A stretch of 63,525 bases of DNA, counting the filler, from Reticulomyxa filosa (lineage: Eukaryota > Protista > Foraminifera): assembly GCA_000512085.1 (NCBI GenBank). It is 17 parts of 17 records of this genome, joined end to end, with 100 filler letters (N's around TTAATTAATTAA, not from the genome) between each part and the next. Parts side by side here need not be neighbours in the genome. Positions count along the whole stretch, not along the records: positions 40,074 to 56,835 come from ASPP01006943.1; 16 more parts are not named here. One strand, written 5' to 3'. Below, in pieces: positions 1-55,062 of the stretch. Under the pieces are notes generated by a model. The model had not been told where the DNA came from and searched no databases. It saw nothing but the letters and a program-made list of their open reading frames with translations. Position numbers and translations under genes: made by a program. The stretch's first letter is position 1. Every line of letters begins with the position of its first letter.

Positions 1-496
1 ATTCTATCTTTTGATAAAACAACAGCATTTCATATTTTTTTTTTATTTGTTTTCATTATTTCTTGTTCATTTTTTGACTTTGATACAAAGCAATGATTAC
101 TAAAATAATTACACGGTAAAGTACCATGTTTAATATATTGAAGCGTATTTAAATCAAACACATTTATATTAGAAGATAAGTGATAAATAACAAACGATTG
201 TTGCTTCCACTAATCAATGCACGTGCTCCTTCATAACCTCCATCTCTTTTAATTATAATTGAATGATTGTGATTGTTTGTGAAAGAAGTCCATTGACTGC
301 AATGGTTTGTATTTGTTTTTGAGCGTATGATAAGAATAACATTTACGTTTATAAAGACCCCACAAATGAGGATTTCATGTTTGTGTAGCACGCATTGAGA
401 CCGATGAAATGGAATGGGCAATTTCTTCAAAGTTTGAAAGGGAGTTGAAGTAATAAGATGTTTATGAGATTTTTGTGTCGTAGTTCGATTGGCCAT
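1..496 (-). pseudogene. Degenerate kelch-like beta-propeller gene of an expanded family
   Basis: TPFQTLKKLPIPF-RSQCVLHKHEILICG and GARALISGSNNRLLFITY are kelch-like blades. The frame breaks and segments are missing; truncated at the window start. Confidence 0.55.
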
Positions 497-739
497 TTTG
501 TTGATGTTGCTGAATTTTTAAGTAGTTTTTAACAAATTCAAAAATTAAATTGATGCCATTATTCAATAGCAAAAGAAAAAAGAATATAGCTCATTTACAT
601 TAACAATCTTGCCATTACTACTACACTATAATTGCATGAACAAATTACTTCTGTGGATTTTTAGTTTAGTAATCATTATTTCATTACATATTCTTTTTCC
701 AGCCAACAATTCTTTATATTATTCGTCAAAGTAGTTTGG

Positions 740-1422
740 CAAACCCCTTCATGGACAGAAAAAAGTTCCAAGTTGAAATCTTGCGTCATCTAAGAAAAGT
801 TGGACACAAAAGTTGGATGAACAGTATTTATTGTTCAATAATTGATTGTTTTCAATTACTTTGTCTGGATCAGAAGATAATACAGTCAATCATTCAAAAC
901 CTATGTGTTGTGTAAAACTTTCATCATATCATTATTATAATCGTCATAATGTCATTTGTTCTTCATCACATAACAAAGTTATTCTTTTTTGGGATATTAA
1001 ACATAATCAACAATTACAAAAGTTAATGGATGCAGATCAAATGAAGTGTAATCATTGTTCATCATTTACAAAATAAATAATTATGAGTGTAAAATATGGA
1101 CCAAATGAACTAGGAAATACAATATTATCTGGATCGAGTGATCATAGTGTTCAATGGACATACAAGTTATGTATTGTCTGTTGAATATTCACTATTTGTA
1201 ATAAATAATATTAAAATTGTGGTAATTCAAATGTGATATGTTCTGGATCAAGAGATAATACAACTCGATCTTGGGATATTCGATCAAATAAGAATCAATT
1301 GTATGTGATCAAAGGAGATGACGAAGATGATGGAATAATATGTTTTAAATTTCTACATTCAAAAATAGAAATGTAATCTTTGTTATTGTTCATTGAAGGG
1401 TCTTATTCGTATTTGGGGATAA
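740..1422 (+). pseudogene. WD40-repeat pseudogene, paralogous to the downstream gene
   Basis: Fragments GHKSWMNSI, CVKLSSYHYYN-RHNVICSSS, SVKYGPNELGNTILSGS, SNVICSGSRDNT-RSWDIRSNK and GLIRIWG* occur in different frames with stops and deletions. Confidence 0.8.
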
Positions 1423-1634
1423 TGTTGTTGACTGATTGATTTTAAAAACTATTAAAAAAAAGAATGATATTTATTGTATTAAAATATTTCTTTACAAACG
1501 TTTCTAAATTCTACTTTTTATAACGTTAAAGTGTTTTGACCGTCCCTTCATTAATTTTGATCTAAAAAAGTTTGAACATTTTTTCATCTTACATCCTTGA
1601 AGACAATCCCAAAAGAAAAAAAAAAGTTAAAAGA

Positions 1635-2609
1635 ATGAGCCTTATCAACGAAAAAGAAACTTCAACTCAACTAGCATTGGTAAACTTCATTTCAAGTTTT
1701 CAGAAGATTGATTCTATTGTATTTATGATTTGAATTAGTCAGAAGAAAATATACAAGCAATTATTCAATATTGGATCCGAGTATTAAAGATTAAATTAGG
1801 ATGGATTCATGACTTTGACAAACTTGTTGTCAATTATGTTATGTTTCATTTGTTTTTGTGTTTATTTATATGTTGTTATTATTCATATTCACTATTTAAC
1901 ATAGGCAACTGTTTTTATGTTTGAAACGTTTCGTTCATCATCAAAATTACTCACAATATTTCGTGGTCATACAAATTGGGTGAAAAGTATTGATTATTCA
2001 GCATTTAATGATTGTCAATTTCTTTGTTCTGGGTCAAATGATAAAACTATTCGTGTATGGGATATTGAAAATAGCAAACAAATTCAATTATTCGAGGGAC
2101 ATTCAAATAGCATAAATTGTGTAAAATTTTCATCATATCATTATCATAATTATCGCCAAAATGTGGTTTGTTCTTCGTCAGAAGACAAAACTATTCGTTT
2201 TTGGGATATCAAGGACAATCGACAAGTGAAAATATTCAATGAACATACTGGTAGTATTTATAGTATTGAATTCTCACCATTTAATGGTGGTAGATACTTA
2301 TGTTCTGGATCACTTGATAAAACTATTCGTTTATTGGATGTTGAAACATACAAATCATTACATGTTTTCAATGGGCATGAAAATGGTGTTTTGTGTGTTG
2401 GCATTTCACCATTACAAAGCAATAATAACAATGATAATAATAATAAAGTAAATAATATTGGAGTGATTGGTGGAAATGGATATACAATTTGTTCTGGATC
2501 ATATGATAAAACTATTCATATATGGGATATTGAAACAACTAAACAATTAATTATTTTTAAAGGACATAAAGGTAATGTGTGGAGTGTAAAATATGGATCA
2601 AATGAATTA
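1635..2609 (+). CDS. WD40-repeat protein, 3' truncated; exons 1635-1679, 1739-1837, 1905->2609
   Basis: Repeated GH...WD units, GT-AG introns of 59 and 67 nt in frame, and the N-terminal module SEENIQAIIQYWIRVLKIKLGWIHDFDKLVVNY. Confidence 0.9.
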
Positions 2610-2709
2610 NNNNNNNNNNNNNNNNNNNNNNNNNNNNNNNNNNNNNNNNNNNNTTAATTAATTAANNNNNNNNNNNNNNNNNNNNNNNNNNNNNNNNNNN
2701 NNNNNNNNN
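2610..2709. other. Artificial contig spacer N44-TTAATTAATTAA-N44 (first of 16)
   Basis: Identical 100-bp linker with six-frame stops at 2610, 4350, 11013, 13296, 15225, 21900, 23124, 25215, 31005, 32187, 33461, 35458, 39974, 56836, 58137 and 62067. Confidence 0.99.
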
Positions 2710-2828
2710 TAAATAAGCTAAGTCTATATGTTCAACCCCTTTTTCAGACAATCAAGAAACTTTCATTATTAACAATGTACTTCAGGTTTCAAAGATTATA
2801 CTAACAGTCTTGGATAGAAGCAGCACAC

Positions 2829-2936
2829 AAAAAAATGAAACGATAAAACAAAATCATGCGGCACTACGTGTTCACTACGTGCCGCATGATATATAGCTTT
2901 ATTTTTTTTCGGTTTGTTTTATCGTTTCATTTTTTT
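2829..2936. repeat. Nested perfect inverted repeat (24-bp outer and 12-bp inner stems)
   Basis: 2829-2852 pairs with 2913-2936. 2853-2864 ATCATGCGGCAC pairs with 2879-2890 GTGCCGCATGAT. Confidence 0.9.
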
Positions 2937-3099
2937 AAAATTTTTTTGTGATGCGTATGAATGTTGCTATGCACATAATTTGTCCAAAAAGTTTTGTGAC
3001 TAATCTCGCTTTTTCCGATATGAATAAATTTGTCAATGATTCTACTATTTTTGATAAAATGAAGTGGAAAAGATTATTTTATTTGATTGTCGATCGTGC

Positions 3100-4349
3100 A
3101 AAATACTGATGATAAGATTGGTCCGTTGCAATATATCTTCATCTTTCACCACTCAATTTTTAGCACTCCAATATCTCATCATTTGCCACAACAATGACTG
3201 ATTCATTTTCTAATTTCAATTTTGAGCATCTTCACCACCAATTCCGACAAGGGAAAAAGGAAGTTTTTTGCCACACACTACCATTGTATAGCTGCAGTTG
3301 CCAATCTTATCAAATTTCTGACGAGGTTTAGTTGCAATGCATTCCAATGAATATACAACCAGATTTCATTTTGTCGAGCAAACGACACAATTCTATGCTG
3401 TTATTTAGTGTAACTATTTCAAAGAGGACAATTAATCAATCATTAAGGAGGAAAAAGAAGTTAAAAATATATTACCAATCGGACATATCTCAGCTCAAAT
3501 CGTTAATTTGTAATTCATGAGGCAAACTGAGTTTATGAATGAAATCACTCCATCACCTGCAGAAGCTGGCTTCTTTGCGCCACCGCGCTTTTTTGCTTTT
3601 TGATTTTTTCTCGAAGCCACTTTTTACTTTAAAGATTTGTGCCACGAATAATTCTTGCAATCTTTATTTTCCCCAAATGCACGCCACGCACAATTTTTAT
3701 TTGCTTGTTATTTATCTATTTATGTGAATATTGTTTGCTTATAGAACCTTTGATGATGCGCGACCAGGTCATTGGCTTGCAAGTGAACATTTATTCTCCA
3801 TTTCGTGCGCGCAAATGTCCTATATTGTTGTATGAAGATCAAAAATCATCGACACTGTGATTGTGTCTGTTTGAACATTGATTCTTTTTGCACTCATCTT
3901 TTTCGTAAAAGGAATACGTAGAGTGTGTTGTATATTGCATACCATATGCTGTGAAGCCATGGTTTGGTCTATGTTGAAGGTCTCCATATGCGAAGGTCGC
4001 AAATGCGGGGTCAATGACTTTCATTACAGCGTATACAGTTTCATTGTAGTCTTCAATCTGAGTATTGACTGATTTCCACAAGCGATTGTTCAGCTATCGT
4101 TTCAACAACTCCTGTGGTGTTAATTGCATAATGCCATCCTCAGATTTACTTGTATCCTTTTCGGGCTCTTCTTTTAAGTTGATCAAGTTTTTCAATTTTT
4201 TCGTTTGCAATCCGTTGACTATTTTCTGCAACATCTCAAAATAAGTGAAAGTATCACTCCATTTCCGGAGGACTCGTCACTGTGTATGAGTAAAAACCAC
4301 AAGACAAAGTCTGGGAGTTGAAGAAAACATCAAAGCATGTACACAGACA
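3100..4349 (-). pseudogene. Disrupted coding sequence of unknown family
   Basis: Protein-like stretches (VLRKWSDTFTYFEMLQKIVNG...ELLKR*LNNRLWKSVNTQIEDY...) are broken by stops and frameshifts. Boundaries are approximate. Confidence 0.3.
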
Positions 4350-4541
4350 NNNNNNNNNNNNNNNNNNNNNNNNNNNNNNNNNNNNNNNNNNNNTTAATTA
4401 ATTAANNNNNNNNNNNNNNNNNNNNNNNNNNNNNNNNNNNNNNNNNNNNAAGTCTGCGAAATATCGTAGCTTTTTTTTTTACGATTTGAATTTGAACCAA
4501 TATCGATAAAACTCAAACCAAACACTTAAACAATTTTCTGG

Positions 4542-5189
4542 GTGTGTTTTTTTTATAAAAATGACAGCCACTTTGTAGGTGTAACAGATATTACAACATT
4601 CCCGTGGAGACACTGTGTAATGAGCAAATTTCAGTCTAGAGAAGAGTCATTTTATGCGATGAGTTGCAGTATGCGCGTTTTACCATTTTTCAAGAGTCCT
4701 GGCTATATGCGAGGAATGTTTTTATTAGATGGAGTATTCAGTGCTATATTTACCATACCTCCAGATCAAAACGAGGACTATGTCATTCGAATTACACCTT
4801 GTTCAAATTTGCTAAGTGGTATTCGTGCTGATATTCAGCCGGATGTTTATGACAAAGATGAATACTTCAGGATTATTGATATATTAAAAGTACCTAACTT
4901 AGAAGAAATATTGATACAATTCCGGCAAGGATATAAAGATGCACTGCGAAGCAGAGATCGTCTGATTGCCAAAGGCATGATCCCAAAGAAAAAAGATACA
5001 CCAAAAAGTGATAAAACAGGGACCAAAGATCATGACACCTCAGAAAATATGATGTCTTTGGAACAATGGCTTTCCTACATTCGAATGCATGGTCAAAAAA
5101 TATTGAGTGACGTTAAAGTTGCACCTGGCAATCTGTTTGTTGGAGATGTTGAAAAACTCAGGAAACAAGACTTTTCAGCGTTGATGTGA
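4542..5189 (+). CDS. Hypothetical protein, probably the terminal exon of a 5'-truncated gene
   Basis: 215-codon open frame of normal complexity in AT-rich DNA; no family recognised. Confidence 0.6.
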   Translation: MCFFYKNDSHFVGVTDITTFPWRHCVMSKFQSREESFYAMSCSMRVLPFFKSPGYMRGMFLLDGVFSAIFTIPPDQNEDYVIRITPCSNLLSGIRADIQPDVYDKDEYFRIIDILKVPNLEEILIQFRQGYKDALRSRDRLIAKGMIPKKKDTPKSDKTGTKDHDTSENMMSLEQWLSYIRMHGQKILSDVKVAPGNLFVGDVEKLRKQDFSALM

Positions 5190-7120
5190 ATTAAATCAAG
5201 TAAAAAAAATTGTAATTCAAATTTTTTTTTTCACACAATAAAATAATTTGTTGTTTTTCTCTTTCAGTTGTTCCGTTTGTTTTTGGATTTGTGTTGTGTT
5301 TTTGGAGGGAAAAAATTTGTGAAAATACAAAATACTTTTGTAAATGCAAGCAACAGTAATTCAATAAATCGCATTGAAGAGACAAAAAAAAAAATAAAAT
5401 AACATTTAGTCTATTACAACTCACAGTTTTATAGAAAAAAAGAGTATGTATTGGTTTAAAATAAAAATTGACAATGTAGAAAGAAAAAAATGGATACTTA
5501 ACGCGTAGTTGTCTGTTTTCACATTAAAGAAAGAGATGTTTGGAATTCCATTCAATTGTGGTTCTTGTTTTGTTTGTTTTCTAAAGACATATTTTGTTTA
5601 AGCGAACATCATTCATATTTTATTTTTTACTGATTAAGTTTAAAAATACGAATATGAACAAATTAATTAATTTATTGAAAAATCAGCATATTTTTACATT
5701 GACAAAATTTTGTTTAAAATTCAATATATTTTTTAATTTATATACACTTTTATGAAATTTAAAGTATTATTACATTTATCTATCACAAATTTTAATACTG
5801 TCTTGTTTGTTATTCACAATTTTTTTTTTTTGAATTTTTATACATTTTTGTCGAATAAAAAGAATTTAATCATCATGTAATTATTCTGCATATAAAAAAT
5901 CTTATTACAAATATCTATTTTTAAAAACATAACTTTAATTATTCACTACGTCAAATAGTACTCAAATATTTCATTTTCCTTTTTTAATTTTAATTTTTTT
6001 TTTTTTTTTTAATTAATTAAATGAAACAATTCTATTTTCTCATAACTTGCAAATAATAACTATGAATATTCAAAAAATAATTTTAATTAACTTATTATTA
6101 TCAAATATCAAATTAATACTACGCACCTCAATATTGGTGAATGTATTGATTAATTTTGATTATTGAAATAAATCAAATATAAAGACATTTTGTAACTATA
6201 TATATATTTTTTGGTTTATATTAAAAATAAATAAATAAATAAAAAATGAAATAACGTAATTGACAAAGTTTGTCAAATTCATGTATCCATCCAAATTTAA
6301 TTTGTACTAATTTAGTACAACGTTTCCTAATTAATTGAATTTTTTTTCTGCTGACTGTTTGAATCACAAATTAAATACAACAAATAAAATAATAAAAAAG
6401 TAAATTAATTAATGAAAACTTACCTACTGTAAAGTTTGTATCATTTTGTTTTTGATGATGCAAAATGAACAAAATTATAAAAGGTGCTTTCAAAAATAGA
6501 TTTTAACAACACATAATATTTAAAATTGAAAAATATAAATCATTTGATATTATAAAAATAATTAGCTCCTTCAGAATATGGAAAAAGAAAGCATTGCAAA
6601 TCATTCTTTTGTCAAAAAAGTAAAATATAAGATTTTATTTTTTTAACTAATTAGTGTCACTTGTGCGAGCATCGAAGAAGTTATTGTTTATTATTTCTAT
6701 GTTATTGCATAGATTGCTATGTATTTTTTCCATCTGACTCCGAAAATGAGTGTAGAAATTTTTGAGAATATATTATGACGAATTTCAATTTGTGGTTGAC
6801 TTACAAAGAGTTTATCACAAGACTTAATTGTGAAAAAAAAATATACCAACATTTCATTTGGATAATATCTAATAGATAAAAGCCACTATAAAATATTTGA
6901 TATATTGTACCACTCGTTGATGTAGTTAAAAATATTGTGGTCTTGGTCACTTACCTTTTATTATTTTTCATGCACCACATTTTTTTTTATTTTTTTTTAT
7001 ACACAAGAAGTAATAATGCTAAGAAAATTGAATGAAATAAACAGCCATTTTTAGTGTAACAGACCCAGAAAACAGGCTAGTAACCGTAGAATTTTTTAAA
7101 ATGGAAAACATCTAATAGCA

Positions 7121-40869: not shown

Positions 40870-43800
40870 TCAACAATGATCACTTTTTTGTTCGTCAGCA
40901 TCATCATTTTTGTGACTGCTTGGCTCTGTCTTTTTAAGTGTTTTGTCTGTAGTTTGAGAGCTTTTGTCATTTTTCGTGTCATCTTGGTCAACTTCCCAAA
41001 TTTCTTTAACAACTTCCAATTTCCGCATCAATGATCTCAATGGAATCAAGGACGTCACAGCCCAGTTTTCAAGTCCAGAAATGCATTGAGAACGGCGTTT
41101 GTATTGATTCACGATTGAACTCCACTCATCTGAAGATGTTTCTATACATTTTATAACAGCACTCAAAGGCATGCCGGAAGCAATTAGATCAGTGCAAATA
41201 TCAATTAACTCTGGAGCCTTTGCGAGCCACTCAAATAAGGAATACTTCATTAAGTCTTTATTTGATTGAGGGCGATCCAATCCATCAAAGTCATATTCCA
41301 GGATCAATTGTCTAGTTTTTGCTCTCAATAATAAGCAGGCATCCATACAACTAATTGGAAGTAATCGATGAACCCGACATTTCACGTGGCATTTAAAGTC
41401 AAATTTTTCAATTTCGTTGCAAACGCTGAAACGACATATTAACAAAATACGAACACTCCTCAATTCAGTTAATAAGCGATGAACGACATTCCAAAATCTA
41501 TGCAAGTGTTCTTGGAGAAAAGTCAAATGATCGAATACGAACAGCGTTGCCCCTTGGCATTTCTCTCGGATTTGTGAGTATATAAATTTGTCTCCTTTCG
41601 AAGAAAAAAGTATTCTCCGTGATTCTACTTTTTTAGTTTCCGAGTCTTGCCAAACCTCTTTGGGGAAATCGTTTGGCATAATTGTCAGCCAAACTTGTGC
41701 TTGTTCGTATATTTCTGATGGTAATTTATTTTTCAAAGTTAAGCTGTGATTTTTGTGTTCGCGGAATAGAATGTATCGATTTTGTTGTTTATCGTCGACG
41801 TACACTATAACCTTGGGTGTATCCGAGTGTTGTTCTTGGCAAATTTGGTGATGGATTTCCGGAGGATAATCCACCATGTCTTTGGTCTTGCTGTCGCGGT
41901 ATTGAAAACGTCCCGAGTCAATCTCCATGCAATCGGCCATGAATTCGAGTAAGCCATCAGGATCGGATTGCAATTTGCTTAAATCGATCCACCACACCCC
42001 ACCGGGAAACAATGGAATGTACCAAGGCCGTGTAAAAAATTGCGCCGCACTTTTGGCGACAGTGGTTGCGCCAATGAAAGGATGTCCCGTTAGTACTGTG
42101 ACATCGTGCATCGGTCTAATCTCAGGATGCAGCAGTTGGATCAAAATATTTATATCGGTCTGTCTTCCCAGCACTTTGCGATGGTCTTCATACCAGCCTG
42201 GACGACAATTGGAAGGAAACTCATACGATATGACCTTCATTTGTTGTTTTTGTTCAGTGACTAAGTCCAAGTCTGCCAATAGTGTTTGTTTGTGATCACT
42301 GTTTCCCAATAGCAAAAATTTTTTGCTGTGTTCGTGAGGAATGTCAGGTTGACAACATTTTAACTTTTTGAATCCCGGACATTCACTTGAGTGATCCTTT
42401 TCACAGCAACGTATGCTTTTGCAATATGGACATCGACACTCGGGCGTGTGTCCTTCGTGTCGACAACAGCAGTCGACTTTTCCTTGCAACGTGATCCCTG
42501 TCAATTGCACGAATGCAATATATGTATTGTATGTATTGTATGTATTGTATGTTACATATAAGATATATTCATAGTATGCATACGTATAGAGAAAACAAGG
42601 AAAATGGATAAGCACATATAAGTCGTTACCAGATCGAGCATTTTTGAACGCCTCTAACACAGTTGTTTTTTGTCCTAATAAGTTTTGATAAAAACTGTAC
42701 GCAAATTCGATGGCCGTTCTGTTGTTGATTTGTACCAGAGAATGTACGGCAACAACGTGTGGTACACCCAGATCGACAAAGGCTTTGGCTACTTGTTCGC
42801 TGAAGCAAGTGGACACAAAGACCAACTTTAATTGAAACAGATTCCCCTCCAATGCCTGTCGAATGCCATCAGCACTAATTGTGGTCATGGCTCCCCAATG
42901 ATCCTCGACCTGTAGCGTTTGCGAATTGGATCCATGTCCACCGATATGCAGTATCTGTGCCCCTCGTTGGATGCACGAAATGAGTGATTGTTTGGTCAAT
43001 ACGCCAAAGAACACACCGAAAGACTGTTCGCATTGGCGGAGCATTGTCTGAAGAGAAATCTGTTCTCGCTCAAAGTCCAAGAAGGGATCGCCGCAGTTCA
43101 AGGGACTCGAATGCAGTACCGCCATGTCCAACTGTTGTTTGAAAAAAGGCTTGTTTCGTCTTTCGTGACCTTTTTTTGCATATAAGCAATACGTGTCAAG
43201 TCATCAAACATTTAATGTTGCGTTTCGACATAAAAGATAGGAAAAAGATAGGAAAAAGATAGGATATAGCAAACATAAAATAAAATTATTATTTTTTTAC
43301 CTAAAAGGTCGAGGTCATAGTGATTGCGACTTTGTCCGTATTTTGCATTGTTCTCTCGATCATTCGAAGAGAGAGGCTGGGATAGCGCTGTAATCAGTCT
43401 TGGCGGCGCCGAATGGGAGCAGTGGATGCAAATGTTGGGCCGAAACGAGTCGCTAAAGTGCTCGCGAAAATGTGGACTGTTAGAAGGAAGCCGATGATGA
43501 TGTCCCGATTGAGCATTTGCTCGGGGATTTTTTGGATACGTAATGACAAATGAAGGCGGAGGAGGAGGGGGAGGAGGAACAGGAGAAGGGGGAAATACAT
43601 GGTCGTTGGCAGAGGTGCTCGGCGAAAAATCAAAAGGTAGACTGGGTACGCTTTTGATTTCGATTTCACTTTCGCCCGAAAACTGCTCGAATGGATCGAC
43701 ATTCTTTTCTTCATTGGAAAAGGGAAGAAATGATGTTGGTGCTTTGGAAAGACGAGGATAGCTTCGATGAGAAGGACTACCCACCTGCTTTTCCAATAAT

Positions 43801-43949
43801 GGCTCTTTTTGCAAAATATCAACGAGGATTGGTATTAACTTTGTTTTGTCGTTGGCTTCGTCAAATCTCTTTGCTTTGCACAAACGCCAGATTACTACTG
43901 ATAATATTTGCGATGGCAATGACATTTCACCACAAACAATTTGATACAT
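40870..43949 (-). CDS. CHAT (caspase-HetF-like) peptidase, Cys/His cluster and degenerate STAND/NB-ARC-like NTPase
   Basis: AVLHSSPL-LDFERE, ILHIGGHG and LVFVSTCFS (His/Cys dyad); GRQTDI, VLTGHPFIGATT, FPGGVWWIDL, LFVFDHL and RILLICR. Introns at about 43132-43299 and 42498-42629. The start is uncertain. Confidence 0.8.
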
Positions 43950-44153
43950 TTCACTTTTTTTTTTTTTTTAAAAAAGAAATGTTTGGTTGTCATTTGCTCT
44001 TTTTTTTAAAAAATAAATAAAAAATAAAAAAAACAAAACTTAAATTTTTCAGCTTTGTACGATTTCATGCCCATCCCTTCCAAAAATAATTTACAATTGT
44101 TTCTTACAGAATGGTCTTGATCTTGAAAACATCCAACACACAACAGAGTTCAC

Positions 44154-45120
44154 AAAAAAAAAAAACAGAAGACACACACACACACAAACACACAAAGGAA
44201 CAACTCTTACATACGCGTCGTGCTCAAATTATATGCTCGTTCAACCAAACCCCATCGTGCACAATTCTCTTGCAGCATTTCTATTCGTTGTGTTCACACA
44301 GACACAAAATACAATGAGTCAATTGCACACACAAAATAAACAATTCCAACTTGTATTGATCGATGATATCGTGGCAAGCAATGAAAAAATATTTGCAATA
44401 ATGCTGATTGCGCCATCTTCAATATTTGCACATTTGCACAACAACTCCAAATTCTCTCGCTTTTGCCAAAACTTTTGCAAAATCACTTTCTTTTCTGTAA
44501 AGTCGTCTTTCCATTCAAAACAGATTTGATTCAATACAACCAAACTTGCCTCCCACATCTCCATTTCCTACATCCGCACACACTTCACTTTCGCAATGCT
44601 TTTTCTCCATTGAATCTACACAAAACAAACCTGAGACTTTTCGAAAAATTGAACCATCAAATCCAATATATTGTAACGGAATAACACCTCATGCAGCTGT
44701 GGCTCTGACGATATCAATGCCAGTGTTTGCAACGCTTTCAATTGCAATATTTCGTCACTTTCTTTTTTTACAAATTCTATTATACGAGGAATATGCAACT
44801 TGAATGCCAGCATTTCTGTTGGTTCACAAATCCAACTCACAGTCTGATCATCTTCAATGTAGAGCCATATATACACCAACGCAAAAAGTATACTTTACCA
44901 AACTATGATTAAGCTGTGAACAGTACCACATTTGCGCTATCTTTAGATAATGCTGACATGCCTCACCACTTGGCATACTATTGGCTGCATTTAGAACCTT
45001 GAATTGTTTGGACATGAATGGTCAACGAGAGGATAATTGGTGTTAGATCTTTCCTCTCTACAAACACAGCTTCAGAAGCAGATTCACTCTCTTTTCTCCG
45101 TGTTCGTATAGCCACAAGTC
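44154..45120 (-). pseudogene. ARM-repeat/importin-alpha-like fragments
   Basis: IBB-like VAIRTRRKESE and ARM-like IPRIIEFVK-EILQLKALQTLALIS-NILDLMVQFF, with stops between fragments. Confidence 0.35.
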
Positions 45121-45433: not shown

Positions 45434-47152
45434 TTATTGACGAGATTGTTTCATTTTAATCCATTTTTTGTATTTAATTTTATTAATCTTTTCTTTTTGT
45501 TGAGTCAAAATAGCTCCTTTCTTTTTCAATAAATCATCAAAGATGGTATTTTTCGAGTTATTTTTGGCATTGAGTTTTTTATCTTTATTTTTATTTTTGC
45601 GTTTGTTACTACTGTTGTCGTTGTCATCATCGTCGTTTTCTTCGTCATTATTACGGCGGTTATTGTGTTTGGATTTGTTATTGGTGACATTGTTGCCAAT
45701 AGGTTTTCGTTTTGCTTCTTGCAAGGTCTTTCTCGCCAACGAGCGAATTTTCAACTCCGGATGATCTCTCCATCGTAATTTGTTCATCTGTTTATCTCTT
45801 CCCTTATGCCGAAATTTTTTGATTCGATTGAGATCATCGTCTTCTGTGGCTATTACATGTCCATGATCACCTTCGAATCGTGCAAATACATGTCCGCGAG
45901 ATGACTTTAGCATTTTCGGATGTGCAGACAATGCAGTTTTCAAATGTTCTACCTCTTTGTCTGCATCATCTTTTGCTCTTTTTTTTTTGTTGGTTTAGTT
46001 TTGTTTCATTTACAAAATAAAAAAAACACGTTGAAACATACTTTTTAAAGTCTTTGACATAAGGCAACACTCGCAGTTTTTTAGAGTCCGTTTTGCCTAA
46101 GAAATTGGTGTTATGCAAATCCAAGGCCCGATGCACACCGAAAATGTTGTCGAATTCAATAAAACCACATTTTTTGCTAACAAATGTTTTGGGGTCTCTG
46201 ACGATGCGCACGTTGACAATTTTGCAAGTGGACTCGTCGTTTCCCTTGCAGCAGTAGTTATCAAAGTGCTGTCGCAAATCGTCCTCGGTGGCGTCAACGG
46301 GTAGTCCTCCAACAAAGACACAATGGTCGGATATTCGCGCGATGTTGCTGTCGCAATAATCGACTCGAATTGTAAATCGACCTTCGACCACCGTGTTATT
46401 TTTTTCCAACGCGATTTTTACCCATTTAGGGTTGTCAAAGCGCACCCAGCAGTTCATATTTTGCTTGCTCGCATTGGTGAGTTCCTTTTACGTGAACGTC
46501 GCACATTCAAACAAACGCGTTTCAGCTCGGTACAATCAACAGAAAAAAAACAGAGTTGACAAAGAACTGTTGTCTCGTCGATGTGACCTCGATTTAATCT
46601 TGATGTGTAAATCGACTTTTCTTTGCGGTTTCGGTGTGCCTTCAAATAATTACTCAAGAAAATATCTTCAATGTGTTCCTTCAAATCTGGAAATAGTTCC
46701 TCTTTGATATGTGTCTCCTTCCAACGGTCGGGAATATTTCCCACAAACACCGTCCTGCGATCCAATTCTTCTCTTTCGCGCTTTTCTTGTGGCGTCAGCT
46801 CTATTTTTGCTGTCGGCTCCTTAAGCTTTTGCTTAAATTGCTTTTTCTCTTTTTTCATTTCTTTCACCATTTTTTTTGATAGTAACGGCTTTCGCTGTCG
46901 AGAAAGTCGAATCTTGCCTTTATAACCCATTGTCATGTCCTTGTCATTTCCCATGCCGTTTTCTTCTGTCCCATTGTTTGATTCTAGTCGAATTCTTTTG
47001 TTTGGCACTTCTATTTTCTCACTTTCTTTTTCTTCTAACAACACTTCCGACAATTTTCTTTTTCGAGGCTCGAGCAAGTGTATGTTTAGAGGTTTCACAG
47101 AAGCTGGATCTGCCAGCATTTTTGAAAGATCTCCTGGTTCATAATCGTCCAT
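45434..47152 (-). CDS. Nucleolar two-RRM protein, Nop12/RBM34-like
   Basis: RRTVFVGNIP, MNCWVRF-IRVD and CVFVGGLP-VRIVRDPKT-CGFIEF, then a basic tail with FEG. Three exon blocks. Confidence 0.8.
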
Positions 47153-48386: not shown

Positions 48387-49831
<1,445 letters not shown>

Positions 49832-50224
49832 ATTCATCTTCATTTGGTTTCAATTTGGTTGAATTCTAACACTTTTTTCCAATACATTTTGCCATTTTGG
49901 TTTTATTGTGAACTGTTTCAACCTTCAGTTTAAAATCTCACACATTTCGATTACACAACGCAAAAATTTTTTGTTTTTTGACCAGTTGAAATCGCAGTTT
50001 TTGTAGTTTTGAATCTTTGCCAGGATAATTCTAAACATAGTCCACTGTTTTCTTCGAGCAGTGTTGATGAAATCACTGAATTTTTAAAATCGTGCATAAA
50101 TTTAAAGTATCCAATTATTACAATTGTACGCAATAATATTTTCTAGGCATGTTAGTGTGAATATTTGTCTAATAAATTTTGGCGTTTTTTTGAAAAACAG
50201 TGGTTGGGCTGCAAAGGCGAAAAA

Positions 50225-52574
50225 ACACGTTAATAATAATTGTAATGGCTGATATAGATAAGCAACATACCCACCGTAGCAGTGGGACTTTTGATAAAAA
50301 AGATTTAATGAATGAAGATGATGCAAAGCTTATCATAATGCATGAGTACTTTAGACAAGGATTTCTTTACCGCTTTCGCAATGCATTGAGCGTATTTTTA
50401 TTTGCAAGTCAAATCGTGACGGACATATTACTGGCGATCCAGTTTTATGAAGATCAGCATACAAAATTTAGCATGAGTATAGTAATGATTGAGGTGTCGA
50501 TGCAGTTGTTCACATGGTGGTGTACAGTAAAACCGGTAGTTTCATTTTACCAAGTGAAAGATCGATCCAAAGAATTTTTATTTCACTCTCGAGACCTGAA
50601 AGGAAATAAAGCATTGGATACGGAGAAAGACGACAAGTTTAAAACACAAAACAAAGGACAAATGAAACAAGCAAGACAACAAAACAAACAAATAAAAAAG
50701 GGCATGGTATTGCACAACGTCAAGAGATATCCGTTTGAAGCTACGATTGGACACAACATTGAACCGCATTCAAGGCTTTCTGTTTGCAGGAAGAACAGGG
50801 GCGTTGCTGGTAGTATTGTTGATACTATTGTATTGCCACAACTACGAAACGATCTCGTCATTGCAGACGTACACAAAGTCGGTGTACTACATATCATTGG
50901 TGGTAAGTCTGTGCAACTTTCTGTATCACTTGTATTTGAGTGTGGACTTTCAATATTTCATGGAAATGGGAAATGTGTACCATTTGGGATGGAGTGATCT
51001 CTTTAAATACCTGATGGTATTTGGCGCATTTGTGGTGAGTACCAATGCGCGTGTTGAGGGCGGTGACGCTTTTTGGCTGTCTGTTTATTTCGTTATTATG
51101 CTGTTGGAAGAAGCGTGTGTCTATCAAATGATCGGCAAATTCGGAACCTCGAATGTCATATCCCAATTGAGTATGTTTTTAGTCTTTTGGGCCGTGTGCA
51201 TGTGCATATTTATTATTCAGCTGGGTCTAAGCAAGACGTCCCATGACGTCGCGCTGGTGCTGTTTGCCATGTGCGGCTTGCCGAGCTTTACCCTTTTGAG
51301 CAGACTCATTTCCACTATCAATCGATCTGCATTACAAAGTCTGCAAGGCAACATGACCGAAAAAGAGCTCTTCTTCTATGGATGGATTCTGTCCAGCGAA
51401 ACCGGTTTGTTTTGTGGTTGGAAGCATTCCCCCCTTTCCCTTCCTTCACAAAAATATCTTTTAGAGTATACGTTGTTCTGTGTACGTATGTTTGGCTTTT
51501 CAAAAAAAGGTAAATCCACAGCGCGTGGTCATCACACGTATGAAGACTTTCGTCACAAAATTTTAGCAATCAACACGCTCATTGTGGACCTGTCTCCTGA
51601 CGAAAATGAGTTGATGGCCAAACTCCACACGCGGGCATTTGATAAGGTGTTTCACTTAACTAAGCTACTCGCATTCACAGAAGCAAAGTCCTTTTGGAAG
51701 CATAGACCACTCTACTTGCGAGCACTTGCCGCTTGGTGGCACAAGATGCCAATGGCAGAGCAAGGGAAGAAAGAGCTCGCTTTTCATGTTGTCATGTTCA
51801 TTGTTTGTATGCTATTGCGAGTCGCGTCGTTCATTGCCCCTTTGACCACCTATTGGTTTGTTCAAGAATGGAACCCTTTTCTTCATGTTATTGCTTTTGC
51901 TTTCCATGCTTGTGTATATATCACAAAAGGGGAAAGGCTTACATATTTTTTTGGAATGGAAACTGCCATATACTAATGTGCAGTAGAGAGGGCGGCAAAA
52001 AAAAAAAAAATAGGCCTGTGCTATATGCTATGTGGTTTCAACTGCAGTGGCTTTGATTTTATATGTACGATATGCATATTTCGTGTTTGCACTTTGGCAT
52101 ATAATGGATCATTCAGGAACAGAATTAACCTTATTTGCTTTGTGCAACATTTTGGAAACGATAAAAGCGCAAGAAAAAATGGACAGTGTGACTGACCCAT
52201 CCACTCGTGACAGTCTCCATAGCAATACCAAATGGCCAAAAGCTCAGCCTACCGAATCACTGGCAAACACCGTTTACGGTAATACTGTGGAAGATGCGGA
52301 GGACGAAATGGAATCGATTGTAAATGCATTTACTGAGAAAGTAGATGAGGATGAAGAGGAAGAGGAAAAAGAAAAGGAAAAAGAAAGAATTGAAGCGTTA
52401 GATTTGCAGATTACAGATGACATCCCACAATCAAAATCTGCAAATGAAAATAAGGATGACATCAACAAACACGATCAAAATACCTTGCCATCAAGCATAA
52501 ATAATGAAGATGGCACTACTTCCCTTGAAATGGCCATTGTGAGTGAAATTCCAATGCTCAAGGCAGAAACATAA
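50225..52574 (+). CDS. Multi-pass membrane protein with an acidic C-terminal tail (weakly XK-related-like N-terminus)
   Basis: Three long ORFs with many hydrophobic helices; motif QIVTDILLAIQFY. Splice sites are approximate. Confidence 0.65.
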
Positions 52575-54395: not shown

Positions 54396-55062
54396 ATGTC
54401 TCGGCTGGTTTGTTCATTGTTGGCAAAATCCCGGTCTAATCCATTTGCACCGAATAATCCTTTGTTCCATGGGGCTAATTGTGCAGCTCCGGTCTTCCGA
54501 CAGTACCGTTTTTTCTCGAAGAAAAGGGACGAAGAGGCTTACGAAAATGTAGACACAGAAGCACCAACCAACAGAAGACAACAATCGCGTGGCGGCAATC
54601 CAAATCGCAACTCAAACAGAAGAACTAGCGACAATGACTTTTCTGGTTATGTAAGGACACAACATTCTCGAGAAAAATCGCAATTCAGTTATTTTCGTTA
54701 AAGAATGAGAGGTGAAGAAAAAACTTCTAGATGATAATGACTTTTGTTGCCATTGGGCAACAGATGATGACAAAATTCAGATTAAGACGCGAGTATGTAT
54801 TCGAAATGTTAGCTTCAATGCAACGCATAACGAAATTAATGATTTCTTGAACGCACAATTCGACGAAATGGCCATACGTTCTAAAATCAAGGGAACTAAT
54901 CTGATCAGCGGTCCTGATGGTAAGTTCAAAGGGCTTGTCTTTGTTGACTGCCAAGATGAGCAAATAGCTCAGCAATTGGTTAATAATTTGAATAAAAAGC
55001 TGTATTTTAACCGTCCTCTCTACGTGGATTTTGCGCATGAAAAACCTAAATTCAAGGGTTAA
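54396..55062 (+). CDS. RRM protein with a mitochondrial-type presequence
   Basis: MSRLVCSLLAKSR...RQYRFFS presequence; RRM RVCIRNVSF...FKGLVFVD...FNRPLYVDFA. Confidence 0.7.

What the first reader, a model, noticed from the sequence alone, without database searches (positions are those of the whole stretch)
40870..43131. CHAT protease-STAND ATPase fusion: an NLR/apoptosome-like protein with no sensor domain
Seen: a caspase-fold CHAT domain with an intact dyad (HIGGHG, STCFS), followed by the ordered STAND/NB-ARC motifs GR, Walker A position GHPFIGATT (Lys replaced by Ala), FPGGVWWIDL, Walker B LFVFDH, sensor ILLICR, HRLLPI-DACLLL and a degenerate GxP (LAKAPELI). The protein then ends without TPR, WD40 or LRR repeats. 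Known: effector-STAND-repeat proteins, including CHAT-bearing ones, act in bacterial, fungal, plant and animal immunity and cell death. Inference: a protist caspase-like signalling hub with a pseudo-ATPase, possibly activated in trans by the expanded stand-alone WD40/TPR proteins. This is the best candidate here for an undescribed system.
Basis: partly seen in the sequence, partly recalled or inferred. Interest (0 to 1): 0.8.

Follow-up and report, generated by a model that had tools for sequence, protein, structure and literature searches.

The report
Foraminiferal CHAT protease with lysine-less NOD
The ORF is the last two exons of an eight-exon Reticulomyxa-type gene for a roughly 1,170-residue protein that joins an armadillo-like N-terminus, a caspase-like CHAT protease, a zinc-finger-like Cys/His module and an NLR/apoptosome-type nucleotide-binding domain that has lost its catalytic lysine, a rare lineage-restricted variant of the protease-NLR theme known from bacteria and fungi.

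Summary
The CHAT domain is real: Pfam E 4.6e-10, and its His/Cys dyad aligns to solved SAVED-CHAT 8tl0. The C-terminal half matches no Pfam family. With an 18-sequence family alignment it folds confidently (pLDDT 85, pTM 0.79) as an AAA+/STAND-type NBD plus helical lid. Best PDB matches are ORC/Cdc6 (Z 15-15.7) and ZAR1, NRC2, Dark, CED-4 and Apaf-1 (Z 13-14.7). ESM Atlas neighbours are almost all NB-ARC/STAND.

All 12 P-loops read lack the Walker A lysine (A/C/L/T). The sensor-1 Arg is not conserved. About 110 residues are inserted before Walker B.

No C-terminal repeats exist. Relatives, including a full-length mRNA-like contig, stop at the same point.

The TTG is not a start, and 44 ORF residues are an in-frame 132-nt intron. 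Six upstream exons (to ATG 45015) add an ARM-like domain and a Pro-rich linker, so "no sensor domain" does not hold.

An exhaustive search found only 20 cluster representatives, from R. filosa and unnamed metagenome or transcriptome contigs. Paralog comparison shows purifying selection.

Likely function: a regulated cysteine protease whose pseudo-NTPase NOD acts as a scaffold or switch. This is a new variant of a known kind.

The parts
44899..45015 (-). Exon 1 (39 codons), with the proposed start ATG at 45015-45013
   Evidence: Nucleotide similarity to the R. filosa paralog locus L006 begins at 45016. The piece matches P0022 aa 11-39 weakly on its own (24 bits; E 1e-17 only as a linked three-piece set). 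Donor GTAAAG; no stops.
44631..44843 (-). Exon 2 (71 codons), ARM-like N-terminal domain
   Evidence: tblastn of P0022 aa 42-169 on window 44819..44373, E 1.7e-14. Acceptor CAG, donor GTTTGT, phase 0.
44351..44567 (-). Exon 3 (217 nt), ARM-like domain continued
   Evidence: Same tblastn match. Acceptor TAG; weak donor GTTGGA. The junction gives a length that fits P0022.
44215..44280 (-). Exon 4 (66 nt)
   Evidence: P0007 aa 25-51 aligns. Donor GTATGT. The junction 'NLSTT-H-QDHSVRNN' matches P0007 'NLKSC-H-RDRAVRKN' in length and keeps the His.
44040..44121 (-). Exon 5 (82 nt)
   Evidence: P0007 aa 52-75 aligns. The junction 'KF-NE-MYQ' matches P0007 'VF-ND-MHA' and P0022 'KY-NE-MKK'.
43301..43953 (-). 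Exon 6 (653 nt): end of the helical N-terminal domain (EMYQIVCGEMSLPSQILSVVIWRL...), then a Pro/Ser-rich low-complexity linker
   Evidence: P0002 aa 11-85 aligns, E 1e-13. ATG 43949 is internal. No Pfam family.
42630..43169 (-). Exon 7: CHAT caspase-like protease domain, with catalytic His in HIGGHG (42948-42931) and Cys in VSTCFS (42816-42799)
   Evidence: Pfam PF12770 E 4.6e-10. The family profile hits solved SAVED-CHAT 8tl0_A at E 7.6e-7, with GHG and the Cys aligned. His and Cys are invariant in 6 of 6 homologues.
42498..42629 (-). Intron 7: 132 nt, in frame, GTAACG..ACAG, contains a (TACAA)n repeat. It was read through by the ORF as 44 spurious residues.
   Evidence: Absent from all homologues. 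Not conserved in the paralog locus L006, whose flanks align. GC 0.29 against 0.41 in exons.
42307..42497 (-). Start of exon 8: Cys/His-rich module (CCCxHxGHxxxCxCxxCx4CC...C...CCxPxxPHxH-KFLLL), a putative zinc-binding linker
   Evidence: 10 Cys/His columns are invariant in 7 family members. No Pfam family. Zinc binding is inferred from the pattern only.
41350..42192 (-). NOD-type nucleotide-binding domain: GR motif 42174-42160, lysine-less P-loop GHPFIGATT 42087-42061, strand 2 FPGGVWWIDL, Walker B LFVFDH 41544-41527, sensor-1 strand ILLICR 41448-41431
   Evidence: AF2 model pLDDT 85.3. VIA Z 13-15.7 to ORC/Cdc6 and STAND NBDs. Atlas features and shapes are almost all NB-ARC/STAND. A P-loop alignment to NadR kinase 9x6f has E 9.5e-4.
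41596..41928 (-). Inserted alpha/beta subdomain of about 110 residues (model residues 108-218) inside the NBD, between helix 2 and the Walker B strand
   Evidence: Confidently modelled (pLDDT above 90). Conserved in the family (RFQYRD...YILF...FPKEVW...RRI.F). The best PDB alignments cover only 210-257 of the model's 459 residues, which would be expected if the insert is left out, but no per-residue alignment was seen.
40960..41349 (-). Helical lid (RNBS-C-like HRLLPIS..DACLLL; GxP-like LAKAPELI 41226-41203) and a C-terminal helical bundle ending in the conserved V[KR]xIW
   Evidence: Model helices 301-430. Aligned to HD1/WHD ranges of ZAR1, NRC2 and CED-4. No beta-wing is predicted.
40870..40959 (-). 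Disordered acidic/Lys-rich tail and stop codon (40872-40870)
   Evidence: pLDDT about 35. Homologues stop within 0-30 residues of the same point. There is no ORF of 62 aa or more downstream, and the sequence is AT-rich to the piece edge.

Best explanation
The finding is the 3' part of an eight-exon nuclear gene (window 45015..40870, minus strand, 3,516 coding nt, about 1,171 aa) of a Reticulomyxa filosa-type foraminifer. The domains, in order, are: an ARM-like alpha-solenoid; a Pro-rich linker; a CHAT (clan CD, caspase-like) cysteine protease with an intact His/Cys dyad; a conserved Cys/His-rich, probably zinc-binding, module; and a STAND/AAA+-type nucleotide-binding oligomerisation domain (NBD, helical lid, small helical bundle). 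There are no C-terminal repeats. All 12 family P-loops read have lost the Walker A lysine, the family has lost a conserved sensor-1 arginine, and the NBD carries an insert of about 110 residues. Shown: the gene model, the domain identities, the fold, the motif losses, the conserved C-terminal end, purifying selection, and the narrow distribution. Inferred: the protein is a regulated protease. The NOD no longer hydrolyses NTP and serves as a conformational or oligomerisation scaffold that holds CHAT inactive until a cue releases or clusters it. That cue would be sensed by the N-terminal ARM-like domain and/or the Cys/His module. Release or clustering would follow the proximity or filament activation seen in apoptosomes and SAVED-CHAT. 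The biological role (cell death or immunity versus another proteolytic pathway) is not established.
For: Gene model: tblastn of full-length relatives and collinear blastn to paralog locus L006. All introns are GT..AG, the exon pieces are stop-free and the total is in frame. CHAT. NOD fold: model pLDDT 85.3, pTM 0.79; Foldseek hits to CED-4, Apaf-1, NRC and ZAR1 at E 2e-5 to 4e-4; VIA Z 13.1-15.7; ESM Atlas features 0.96 to NB-ARC, NACHT and nSTAND clusters; Atlas shape search with 8 of 10 rows carrying STAND-type NTPase families or names. Sub-threshold Pfam matches to AAA_16, AAA_22, KAP_NTPase and nSTAND3 occur in family members. Lysine-less P-loop in all 12 sequences read. Conserved C-terminal stop. 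Selection: pN 0.13-0.15 against pS 0.64-0.86 versus the paralog. ARM-like N-terminus in orthologue P0022: DUF7377 E 2.4e-6, ARM_PUB E 0.002, and ARM/HEAT feature neighbours at 0.95.
Against: No experiment or RNA evidence is available; no RNA run was listed. The window protein's C-half has no Pfam hit even at E 10. PDB fold scores tie ORC/Cdc6 with STAND, and Foldseek ranks RuvBL1/2 first. No winged helix with an MHD-type His was recognised. The self-association test gave no answer. The ARM-like call rests on an orthologue, since the window's short exons give no Pfam hit on their own. Loss of NTP binding is inferred from motifs only.
Confidence: 0.6

Rival explanations
1. The NOD is still a working nucleotide switch with a non-canonical P-loop. 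A basic residue inside the loop (G-x-x-[KR]-x-G-[ACLT]-[ST]-[ST]) would replace the missing Walker A lysine, so activation is nucleotide-dependent as in Apaf-1 and NLRs.
For: 11 of 12 family P-loops carry K or R at loop positions 2-4. The Gly scaffold, the [ST][ST] after the lost Lys and the Walker B Asp are conserved. The P-loop geometry is modelled confidently.
Against: The window copy itself (GHPFIGATT) lacks that basic residue. Walker B is hhhhD[HQ], without a second acidic residue. The sensor-1 position varies (R/T/S/N/H). No precedent was tested here.
Confidence: 0.2
2. The C-half is not a STAND module but a divergent ORC/Cdc6-, TnsC- or RuvBL-like AAA+ domain. RuvBL also has an insertion between Walker A and B. 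On this reading the protein has nothing to do with NLR-type signalling.
For: The top VIA Z-scores are ORC/Cdc6 (15.1-15.7) and TnsC (14.4). Foldseek's top hits are RuvBL1/2, which carry a domain inserted between the Walker motifs. There is a weak PADLOC TRIP13 hit at E 0.01.
Against: The Z differences from ZAR1, NRC2 and Dark are under 1, so they are tied. RuvBL is absent from the top 50 by Z, and its Foldseek TM is 0.30 at rmsd about 15. Atlas feature and shape neighbours are almost all NB-ARC, NACHT, nSTAND or AAA_16/22 STAND proteins. The motif order GR, P-loop, hhhWhDL, Walker B, hhhhxxR, RhxxIS..A..LL, xP is that of NB-ARC (established knowledge, Leipe et al. 2004). Fusion to a CHAT effector is typical of STAND proteins.
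Confidence: 0.12
3. The locus is a decaying, non-functional paralog of an expanded family, and the motif losses are simply pseudogenisation.
For: The paralog locus L006 has stops in its P-loop stretch and is split into four gene models. The window copy has the most degenerate P-loop.
Against: All eight exon pieces are stop-free with consistent phases. Synonymous sites are saturated while pN is only 0.13-0.15. The same motif state, including the lost Lys, is shared by distant relatives at 24-33% identity, so it is ancestral and maintained.
Confidence: 0.05

Closest known systems
CHAT-bearing NLR-like (STAND) proteins of fungi and bacteria, e.g. HET-Q2-like CHAT or S8 proteases that cleave gasdermins (PMC8851545)
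   Same: A caspase-like CHAT effector sits in one polypeptide with a P-loop NOD module, and repeat-type domains are present in the same protein.
   Different: In those proteins the repeats (TPR, WD40, ANK) follow the NOD and the P-loop is canonical. Here the only repeat-like domain (ARM-like) is N-terminal to the protease, and nothing follows the NOD. The Walker A Lys is missing in all 12 family P-loops read, the NBD has an insert of about 110 residues, and a Cys/His module links CHAT to the NOD. No gasdermin-like neighbour is present.
Apaf-1 / CED-4 / Dark apoptosome and plant NB-ARC NLRs (ZAR1, NRC2)
   Same: NBD plus helical-lid fold (Z 13.1-14.7), the NB-ARC-like motif order, and a functional link to a caspase-fold protease.
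   Different: The protease is fused in cis instead of being recruited through CARD. There are no WD40 or LRR repeats. The catalytic Lys is absent and the sensor-1 Arg is not conserved. The WHD and MHD-type His were not identified. No Pfam NB-ARC hit.
SAVED-CHAT of type III CRISPR (PDB 8tl0)
   Same: It is the closest solved relative of the protease domain by sequence (E 7.6e-7). The His (GHG) and Cys align. It is activated by ligand-induced oligomerisation (bioRxiv 10.1101/2024.05.08.593092 cites the oligomeric structure).
   Different: Its regulatory domain is a cyclic-oligoadenylate-binding SAVED domain, not a NOD, and it is prokaryotic.
Nucleotide-independent AAA+/STAND pseudo-ATPases, e.g. 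the Sir3 AAA+ domain (3te6)
   Same: An AAA+-type fold is kept as a scaffold after loss of catalytic motifs. Sir3 appears among the fold hits (Z 13.6).
   Different: The biology is unrelated (chromatin silencing). That Sir3 does not bind nucleotide is from my own knowledge and was not tested here.

Membership tests
CHAT (Pfam PF12770, clan CD caspase-like peptidases) | Profile match above the curated cut-off | tested here: met
   39.9 bits against a cut-off of 24, E 4.6e-10, on exon 7. Paralog P0002 scores 41.4 bits.
CHAT (Pfam PF12770, clan CD caspase-like peptidases) | Catalytic His (in the HG motif after strand 3) and Cys (after strand 4) are present | tested here: met
   HIGGHG and VSTC align to ILHFIGHG and LNAC of solved SAVED-CHAT 8tl0_A. 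Both are invariant in 6 of 6 family members.
CHAT (Pfam PF12770, clan CD caspase-like peptidases) | Caspase-haemoglobinase fold with the dyad juxtaposed | not tested
STAND NTPases (NB-ARC / NACHT / AAA_16 class; Leipe et al. 2004) | P-loop NTPase alpha/beta core followed by a helical lid (HD1/ARC1) | tested here: met
   Model pLDDT 85.3. Z 13.1-14.7 to ZAR1, NRC2, Dark, CED-4 and Apaf-1 over 213-257 residues. Atlas neighbours are almost all STAND. ORC/Cdc6 scores equally (Z 15-15.7), so the fold alone does not discriminate.
STAND NTPases (NB-ARC / NACHT / AAA_16 class; Leipe et al. 2004) | Canonical Walker A GxxxxGK[ST] | tested here: not met
   The Lys is replaced by Ala in the window copy and by C, L or T in all 11 relatives read.
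STAND NTPases (NB-ARC / NACHT / AAA_16 class; Leipe et al. 2004) | Walker B hhhhD[DE] and a sensor-1 Arg | tested here: inconclusive
   The Walker B Asp is conserved but is followed by H or Q. The sensor-1 position is R in the window (ILLICR) and T, S, N or H in relatives.
STAND NTPases (NB-ARC / NACHT / AAA_16 class; Leipe et al. 2004) | N-terminal hhGRExE motif and a GxP motif in the lid | tested here: inconclusive
   VLGRQ, IVGRG and IVGRA are conserved upstream of the P-loop. The lid carries the conserved W-L-x-[KR]-[SA]-P-x-L-I between two helices, with Gly replaced. ORC/Cdc6 has a similar GR-type helix.
STAND NTPases (NB-ARC / NACHT / AAA_16 class; Leipe et al. 2004) | Winged-helix domain after the lid, with the conserved His (MHD/LHD) | tested here: inconclusive
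   The model shows only helices at 362-430 and no beta-wing. No conserved His motif is seen in alignment A2.
STAND NTPases (NB-ARC / NACHT / AAA_16 class; Leipe et al. 2004) | Significant match to a curated STAND profile | tested here: not met
   The window's C-half gives nothing at E up to 10. Relatives give only sub-threshold AAA_16 (20.5 bits against 32.6), AAA_22, KAP_NTPase and nSTAND3.
NLR tripartite architecture (effector-NOD-C-terminal repeats) | Superstructure-forming repeats C-terminal to the NOD | tested here: not met
   The protein and its relatives end 0-30 residues after V[KR]xIW, or in low-complexity tails of up to about 130 residues in P0007 and P0008. The mRNA-like contig L002 ends its ORF at 3985 of 4086 nt. 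There is no downstream ORF of 62 aa or more.
Armadillo/HEAT-type alpha-solenoid (N-terminal domain) | Profile or feature match to ARM-type repeats | tested here: inconclusive
   Orthologue P0022 aa 1-300: DUF7377 at 27.9 bits against a cut-off of 27, ARM_PUB E 0.002, and ARM/HEAT feature neighbours at 0.93-0.95. The window exons alone give no hit. No structure model was made.

The most novel reading that the evidence does not exclude
A retarian (foraminiferal) 'one-polypeptide apoptosome'. A caspase-like protease is permanently fused to a NOD that has given up nucleotide hydrolysis. Instead, the NOD is switched by its family-specific insert domain, by the Cys/His zinc module (for example redox or metal sensing), or by a relocated P-loop lysine. 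Target recognition has moved to an N-terminal ARM-like domain. This would be an independently evolved NLR logic in Rhizaria.
Probability: 0.2. Interest if true: 0.75.

Novelty: new variant of a known kind. Interest (0 to 1): 0.52.

Why it matters
Protease-NOD fusions are known from bacteria and fungi, and the apoptosome is known from animals. Nothing comparable has been described in Rhizaria as far as I could find. Full-text searches pairing Reticulomyxa with CHAT or NB-ARC returned no title or abstract describing such a protein; those papers were not read. This family shows the effector-NOD theme in a different order (repeat, effector, NOD). Its NOD has lost the catalytic lysine in all 12 P-loops read yet is kept under purifying selection. 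That makes it a natural test case for whether a NOD can work as a nucleotide-independent scaffold. It also gives a defined entry point for studying regulated proteolysis or cell death in foraminifera. In addition, the published R. filosa annotation splits such genes into fragments, so the family has been invisible to domain-architecture surveys.

Tried and rejected
- **Profile and sequence scans of the C-half:** Pfam, NCBIfam and single-sequence PDB searches found nothing. PADLOC gave only a weak TRIP13 hit.
- **First AF2 model:** with 4 paralogs it was unusable (pLDDT 44.5). Only the 18-sequence alignment gave a good model.
- **Family-profile search of the PDB:** the only hit was a marginal P-loop kinase, NadR 9x6f, E 9.5e-4.
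- **Complex prediction:** two copies of the C-half gave 'no answer' (score 0.00). This is not evidence either way.
- **RNA evidence:** The look-up of sequencing runs listed no RNA run, so read laying was not used and the splice model has no read support.
- **Alternative splice junction:** joining exon 6 to the TTG at 43131 through the acceptor at 43133/43132 breaks the frame. The acceptor at 43171/43170 restores it.
- **Separase:** considered because it combines an alpha-solenoid with a clan CD protease. Rejected because the Pfam match is CHAT and a NOD follows the protease.
- Exons were searched one by one by reference. In one script the exon pieces were strung together in memory to compute GC content only. 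The string was not translated, searched, printed or saved.
Full report
**Observation**

The ORF 40870..43131 on the minus strand (753 aa) exists as described, and all quoted motifs are at the stated places. Pfam finds a CHAT domain (PF12770, E 9.3e-9 on the ORF; E 4.6e-10 and 39.9 bits against a cut-off of 24 on the exon alone). Pfam, NCBIfam and a single-sequence PDB search find nothing in the C-terminal half. PADLOC gives only a weak TRIP13 (AAA+) match over the P-loop area (E 0.01).

**Organism and family**

- A word-based search with the last exon found three Reticulomyxa filosa proteins: RFI_21069 (77% identity), RFI_01212 (47%, 910 aa, CHAT plus the same C-half) and RFI_11353.
- An exhaustive phmmer search of 1.84 billion cluster representatives found only 20 proteins at E up to 0.001. 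These are the R. filosa paralogs plus unnamed proteins from metagenome or transcriptome contigs: TARA and other ENA assemblies, JGI and Logan.
- The long ones (P0004, P0022, P0005, P0007, P0008, P0012) share the order CHAT, Cys/His module, C-half.
- The family is therefore rare. As far as sources can be named, it is foraminiferal. The taxa of the unnamed contigs were not determined.

**Gene model**

The ORF is not the whole gene. Full-length relatives carry a long N-terminus that maps by tblastn onto the window upstream of the ORF:

- P0022 aa 42-169 on 44819..44373 (E 1.7e-14)
- P0007 aa 1-72 on 44356..44057
- P0002 aa 11-85 on 43994..43752

Reading the sequence gives eight exons:

| Exon | Coordinates |
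|---|---|
| 1 | 45015..44899 |
| 2 | 44843..44631 |
| 3 | 44567..44351 |
| 4 | 44280..44215 |
| 5 | 44121..44040 |
| 6 | 43953..43301 |
| 7 | 43169..42630 |
| 8 | 42497..40870 |

All seven introns are GT..AG, with lengths of 55, 63, 70, 93, 86, 131 and 132 nt. The coding total is 3,516 nt, which is in frame and gives about 1,171 aa. Every exon piece is free of stops.

Junction residues reproduce those of the relatives. Examples are NLSTT-H-QDHSVRNN against NLKSC-H-RDRAVRKN, and KF-NE-MYQ against VF-ND-MHA.

The R. filosa paralog locus L006 (ASPP01018417.1) is collinear with the whole gene at 68-77% nucleotide identity. That similarity starts exactly at the proposed ATG and drops out in the introns.

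The TTG at 43131 is not a start. ORF residues 168-211 are an in-frame intron (42629..42498) that every homologue lacks.

No RNA run was listed, so the splice model rests on homology and splice signals only.

**CHAT domain**

Six family members keep His (GHG) and Cys (STC) invariant. The family profile hits the solved SAVED-CHAT structure 8tl0_A (E 7.6e-7), with both catalytic positions aligned. The identity of 8tl0 comes from bioRxiv 10.1101/2024.05.08.593092. The domain is compact, about 180 residues from the first strand 'AVLHS' to 'FKNARS'. Its fold was not modelled.

**Cys/His module**

Between CHAT and the NOD lies the conserved pattern CCCxHxGHx3CxCx2Cx4CC...C...CCxPx2PHxH-KFLLL. Ten Cys/His columns are invariant in seven sequences. 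No Pfam family matches. Zinc binding is an inference from the pattern.

**C-terminal half**

- **Model quality.** With four paralogs AF2 failed (pLDDT 44.5). With an 18-sequence family alignment (A2) it gave pLDDT 85.3 and pTM 0.79.
- **Foldseek against the PDB.** The search returns RuvBL1/2, then CED-4, Apaf-1, NRC2/4 and ZAR1. The best superposition is 6j5t_C, with TM 0.41 and rmsd 5.6.
- **Exhaustive VIA-align search.** Scores are ORC/Cdc6 Z 15.1-15.7, ZAR1 14.7, TnsC 14.4, NRC2 14.3, Dark 14.1, WRR4A 14.0, CED-4 13.7, Apaf-1 13.1 and Avs 12-12.8.
- **ESM Atlas.** The feature neighbours (0.93-0.96) are mostly NB-ARC, NACHT, nSTAND or AAA_16 clusters. In the shape search, 8 of 10 rows carry STAND-type NTPase families or names.
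- **Sub-threshold Pfam matches in relatives.** These are AAA_16 (E 1.2e-4), AAA_22, KAP_NTPase and nSTAND3.
- **Motif placement in the model.** The P-loop lies between strand 50-55 and helix 61-71. 'GGVWWIDL' is strand 2. Walker B is on strand 235-242, 'ILLICR' on strand 266-273 and 'HRLLPIS..DACLLL' at strand 5 and the first lid helix. 'AP' lies between two lid helices, as GxP does in NB-ARC.

The P-loop NOD reading is therefore confirmed. STAND membership is favoured but not proven, because ORC/Cdc6 ties on Z and no winged helix or MHD-type His was recognised.

**Degenerate catalytic motifs and the insert**

All 12 P-loops read lack the Walker A Lys. It is Ala in the window and C, L or T elsewhere. 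Walker B is hhhhD[HQ]. The sensor-1 residue varies.

Eleven of the twelve keep a K or R inside the loop (G-x-x-[KR]-x-G). The window copy (GHPFIGATT) does not.

A conserved, confidently modelled alpha/beta insert of about 110 residues (model 108-218, window 41928..41596) sits between helix 2 and the Walker B strand. The best PDB alignments cover only 210-257 of the model's 459 residues. That is what would be expected if the insert is left out, but no per-residue alignment was seen.

**C-terminus**

The family ends 0-30 residues after a conserved V[KR]xIW, or in low-complexity tails. P0022 lies on a 4,086-nt mRNA-like contig whose ORF runs from 62 to 3985. Downstream of 40870 the window is AT-rich and has no ORF of 62 aa or more up to the piece edge. 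No TPR, WD40 or LRR repeats are added.

**N-terminus**

In orthologue P0022, aa 1-300 match DUF7377 (27.9 bits against a cut-off of 27) and ARM_PUB (E 0.002). Their feature neighbours are all ARM/HEAT proteins. The window's short exons give no Pfam hit on their own. A subfamily (P0012) has a Cys-rich N-terminus instead.

**Selection**

Against paralog L006, pN is 0.13-0.15 and pS is 0.64-0.86, so synonymous sites are saturated. Where it could be computed, dN/dS is 0.12-0.25. The gene is maintained, not decaying.

**Context**

The neighbours are housekeeping genes: RRM proteins and a 26S proteasome Rpt-type ATPase. There is no gasdermin-like or other obvious partner nearby.

**Interpretation**

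The protein is best read as a regulated CHAT protease. Its NOD has become a pseudo-NTPase scaffold or switch, and an N-terminal ARM-like domain and a Cys/His module are candidate input domains.

CHAT-bearing NLR-like proteins and CHAT proteases that cleave gasdermins are known in fungi and bacteria (PMC8851545; PMC10907252). This family differs from them in four ways:

- domain order (repeat, effector, NOD, with no C-terminal repeats)
- loss of the Walker A Lys in every P-loop read
- the NBD insert
- the Cys/His linker

Self-association could not be assessed (no answer). Full-text searches pairing Reticulomyxa with CHAT or NB-ARC returned no title or abstract describing such a protein; those papers were not read.

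**Verdict**

The finding is real, and its core interpretation (a CHAT-NOD fusion with a pseudo-ATPase) is supported. The claim 'no sensor domain' came from seeing only the last two exons. This is a new variant of a known kind, of moderate interest.

Noticed in passing
L006 (R. filosa ASPP01018417.1) 2499-7029: A paralog collinear with the whole window gene is annotated as four separate gene models (183 aa, 259 aa CHAT, 303 aa RFI_21069, and more). Its P-loop stretch has stops in the best frame. It has an extra intron of about 68 nt at the position of window 41317. It is either a pseudogene or an assembly or annotation problem.
   Followed up: partly
window 42087-42061 and the family P-loops: 11 of 12 family members have K or R inside the lysine-less P-loop (G-x-x-[KR]-x-G-[ACLT]-[ST]-[ST]). 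The window copy, GHPFIGATT, is the exception. This may be a relocated basic residue.
   Followed up: no
window 48387-49862 (+): A split ORF pair encodes a 26S proteasome regulatory AAA ATPase (Prot_ATP_ID_OB_C E 1.5e-11; AAA E 3.7e-21; AAA_lid_3), with at least one intron.
   Followed up: partly
window 45966-47152 (-) and 54712-55062 (+): Two RRM-domain protein genes (RRM_1 E 7.5e-13 and 1e-4). The first ends about 420 nt upstream of the proposed start of the CHAT-NOD gene.
   Followed up: partly
window 50200-52574 (+): Overlapping long ORFs (265, 413 and 180 aa) encode a hydrophobic, probably multi-pass membrane protein with no Pfam match.
   Followed up: no
window about 44190-44165 and 42560-42520 (-): Simple repeats lie inside introns: (GT)n in intron 4 and (TACAA)n in intron 7. 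The latter is why the in-frame intron translated as 'TYNTYNTYNTY'.
   Followed up: no
L003 (TARA metagenome scaffold) 1205-3382: A subfamily (P0012, P0014, P0017, P0020) has Thr at the lost-Lys position and, in P0012, a Cys-rich N-terminus with no ARM-like region.
   Followed up: no
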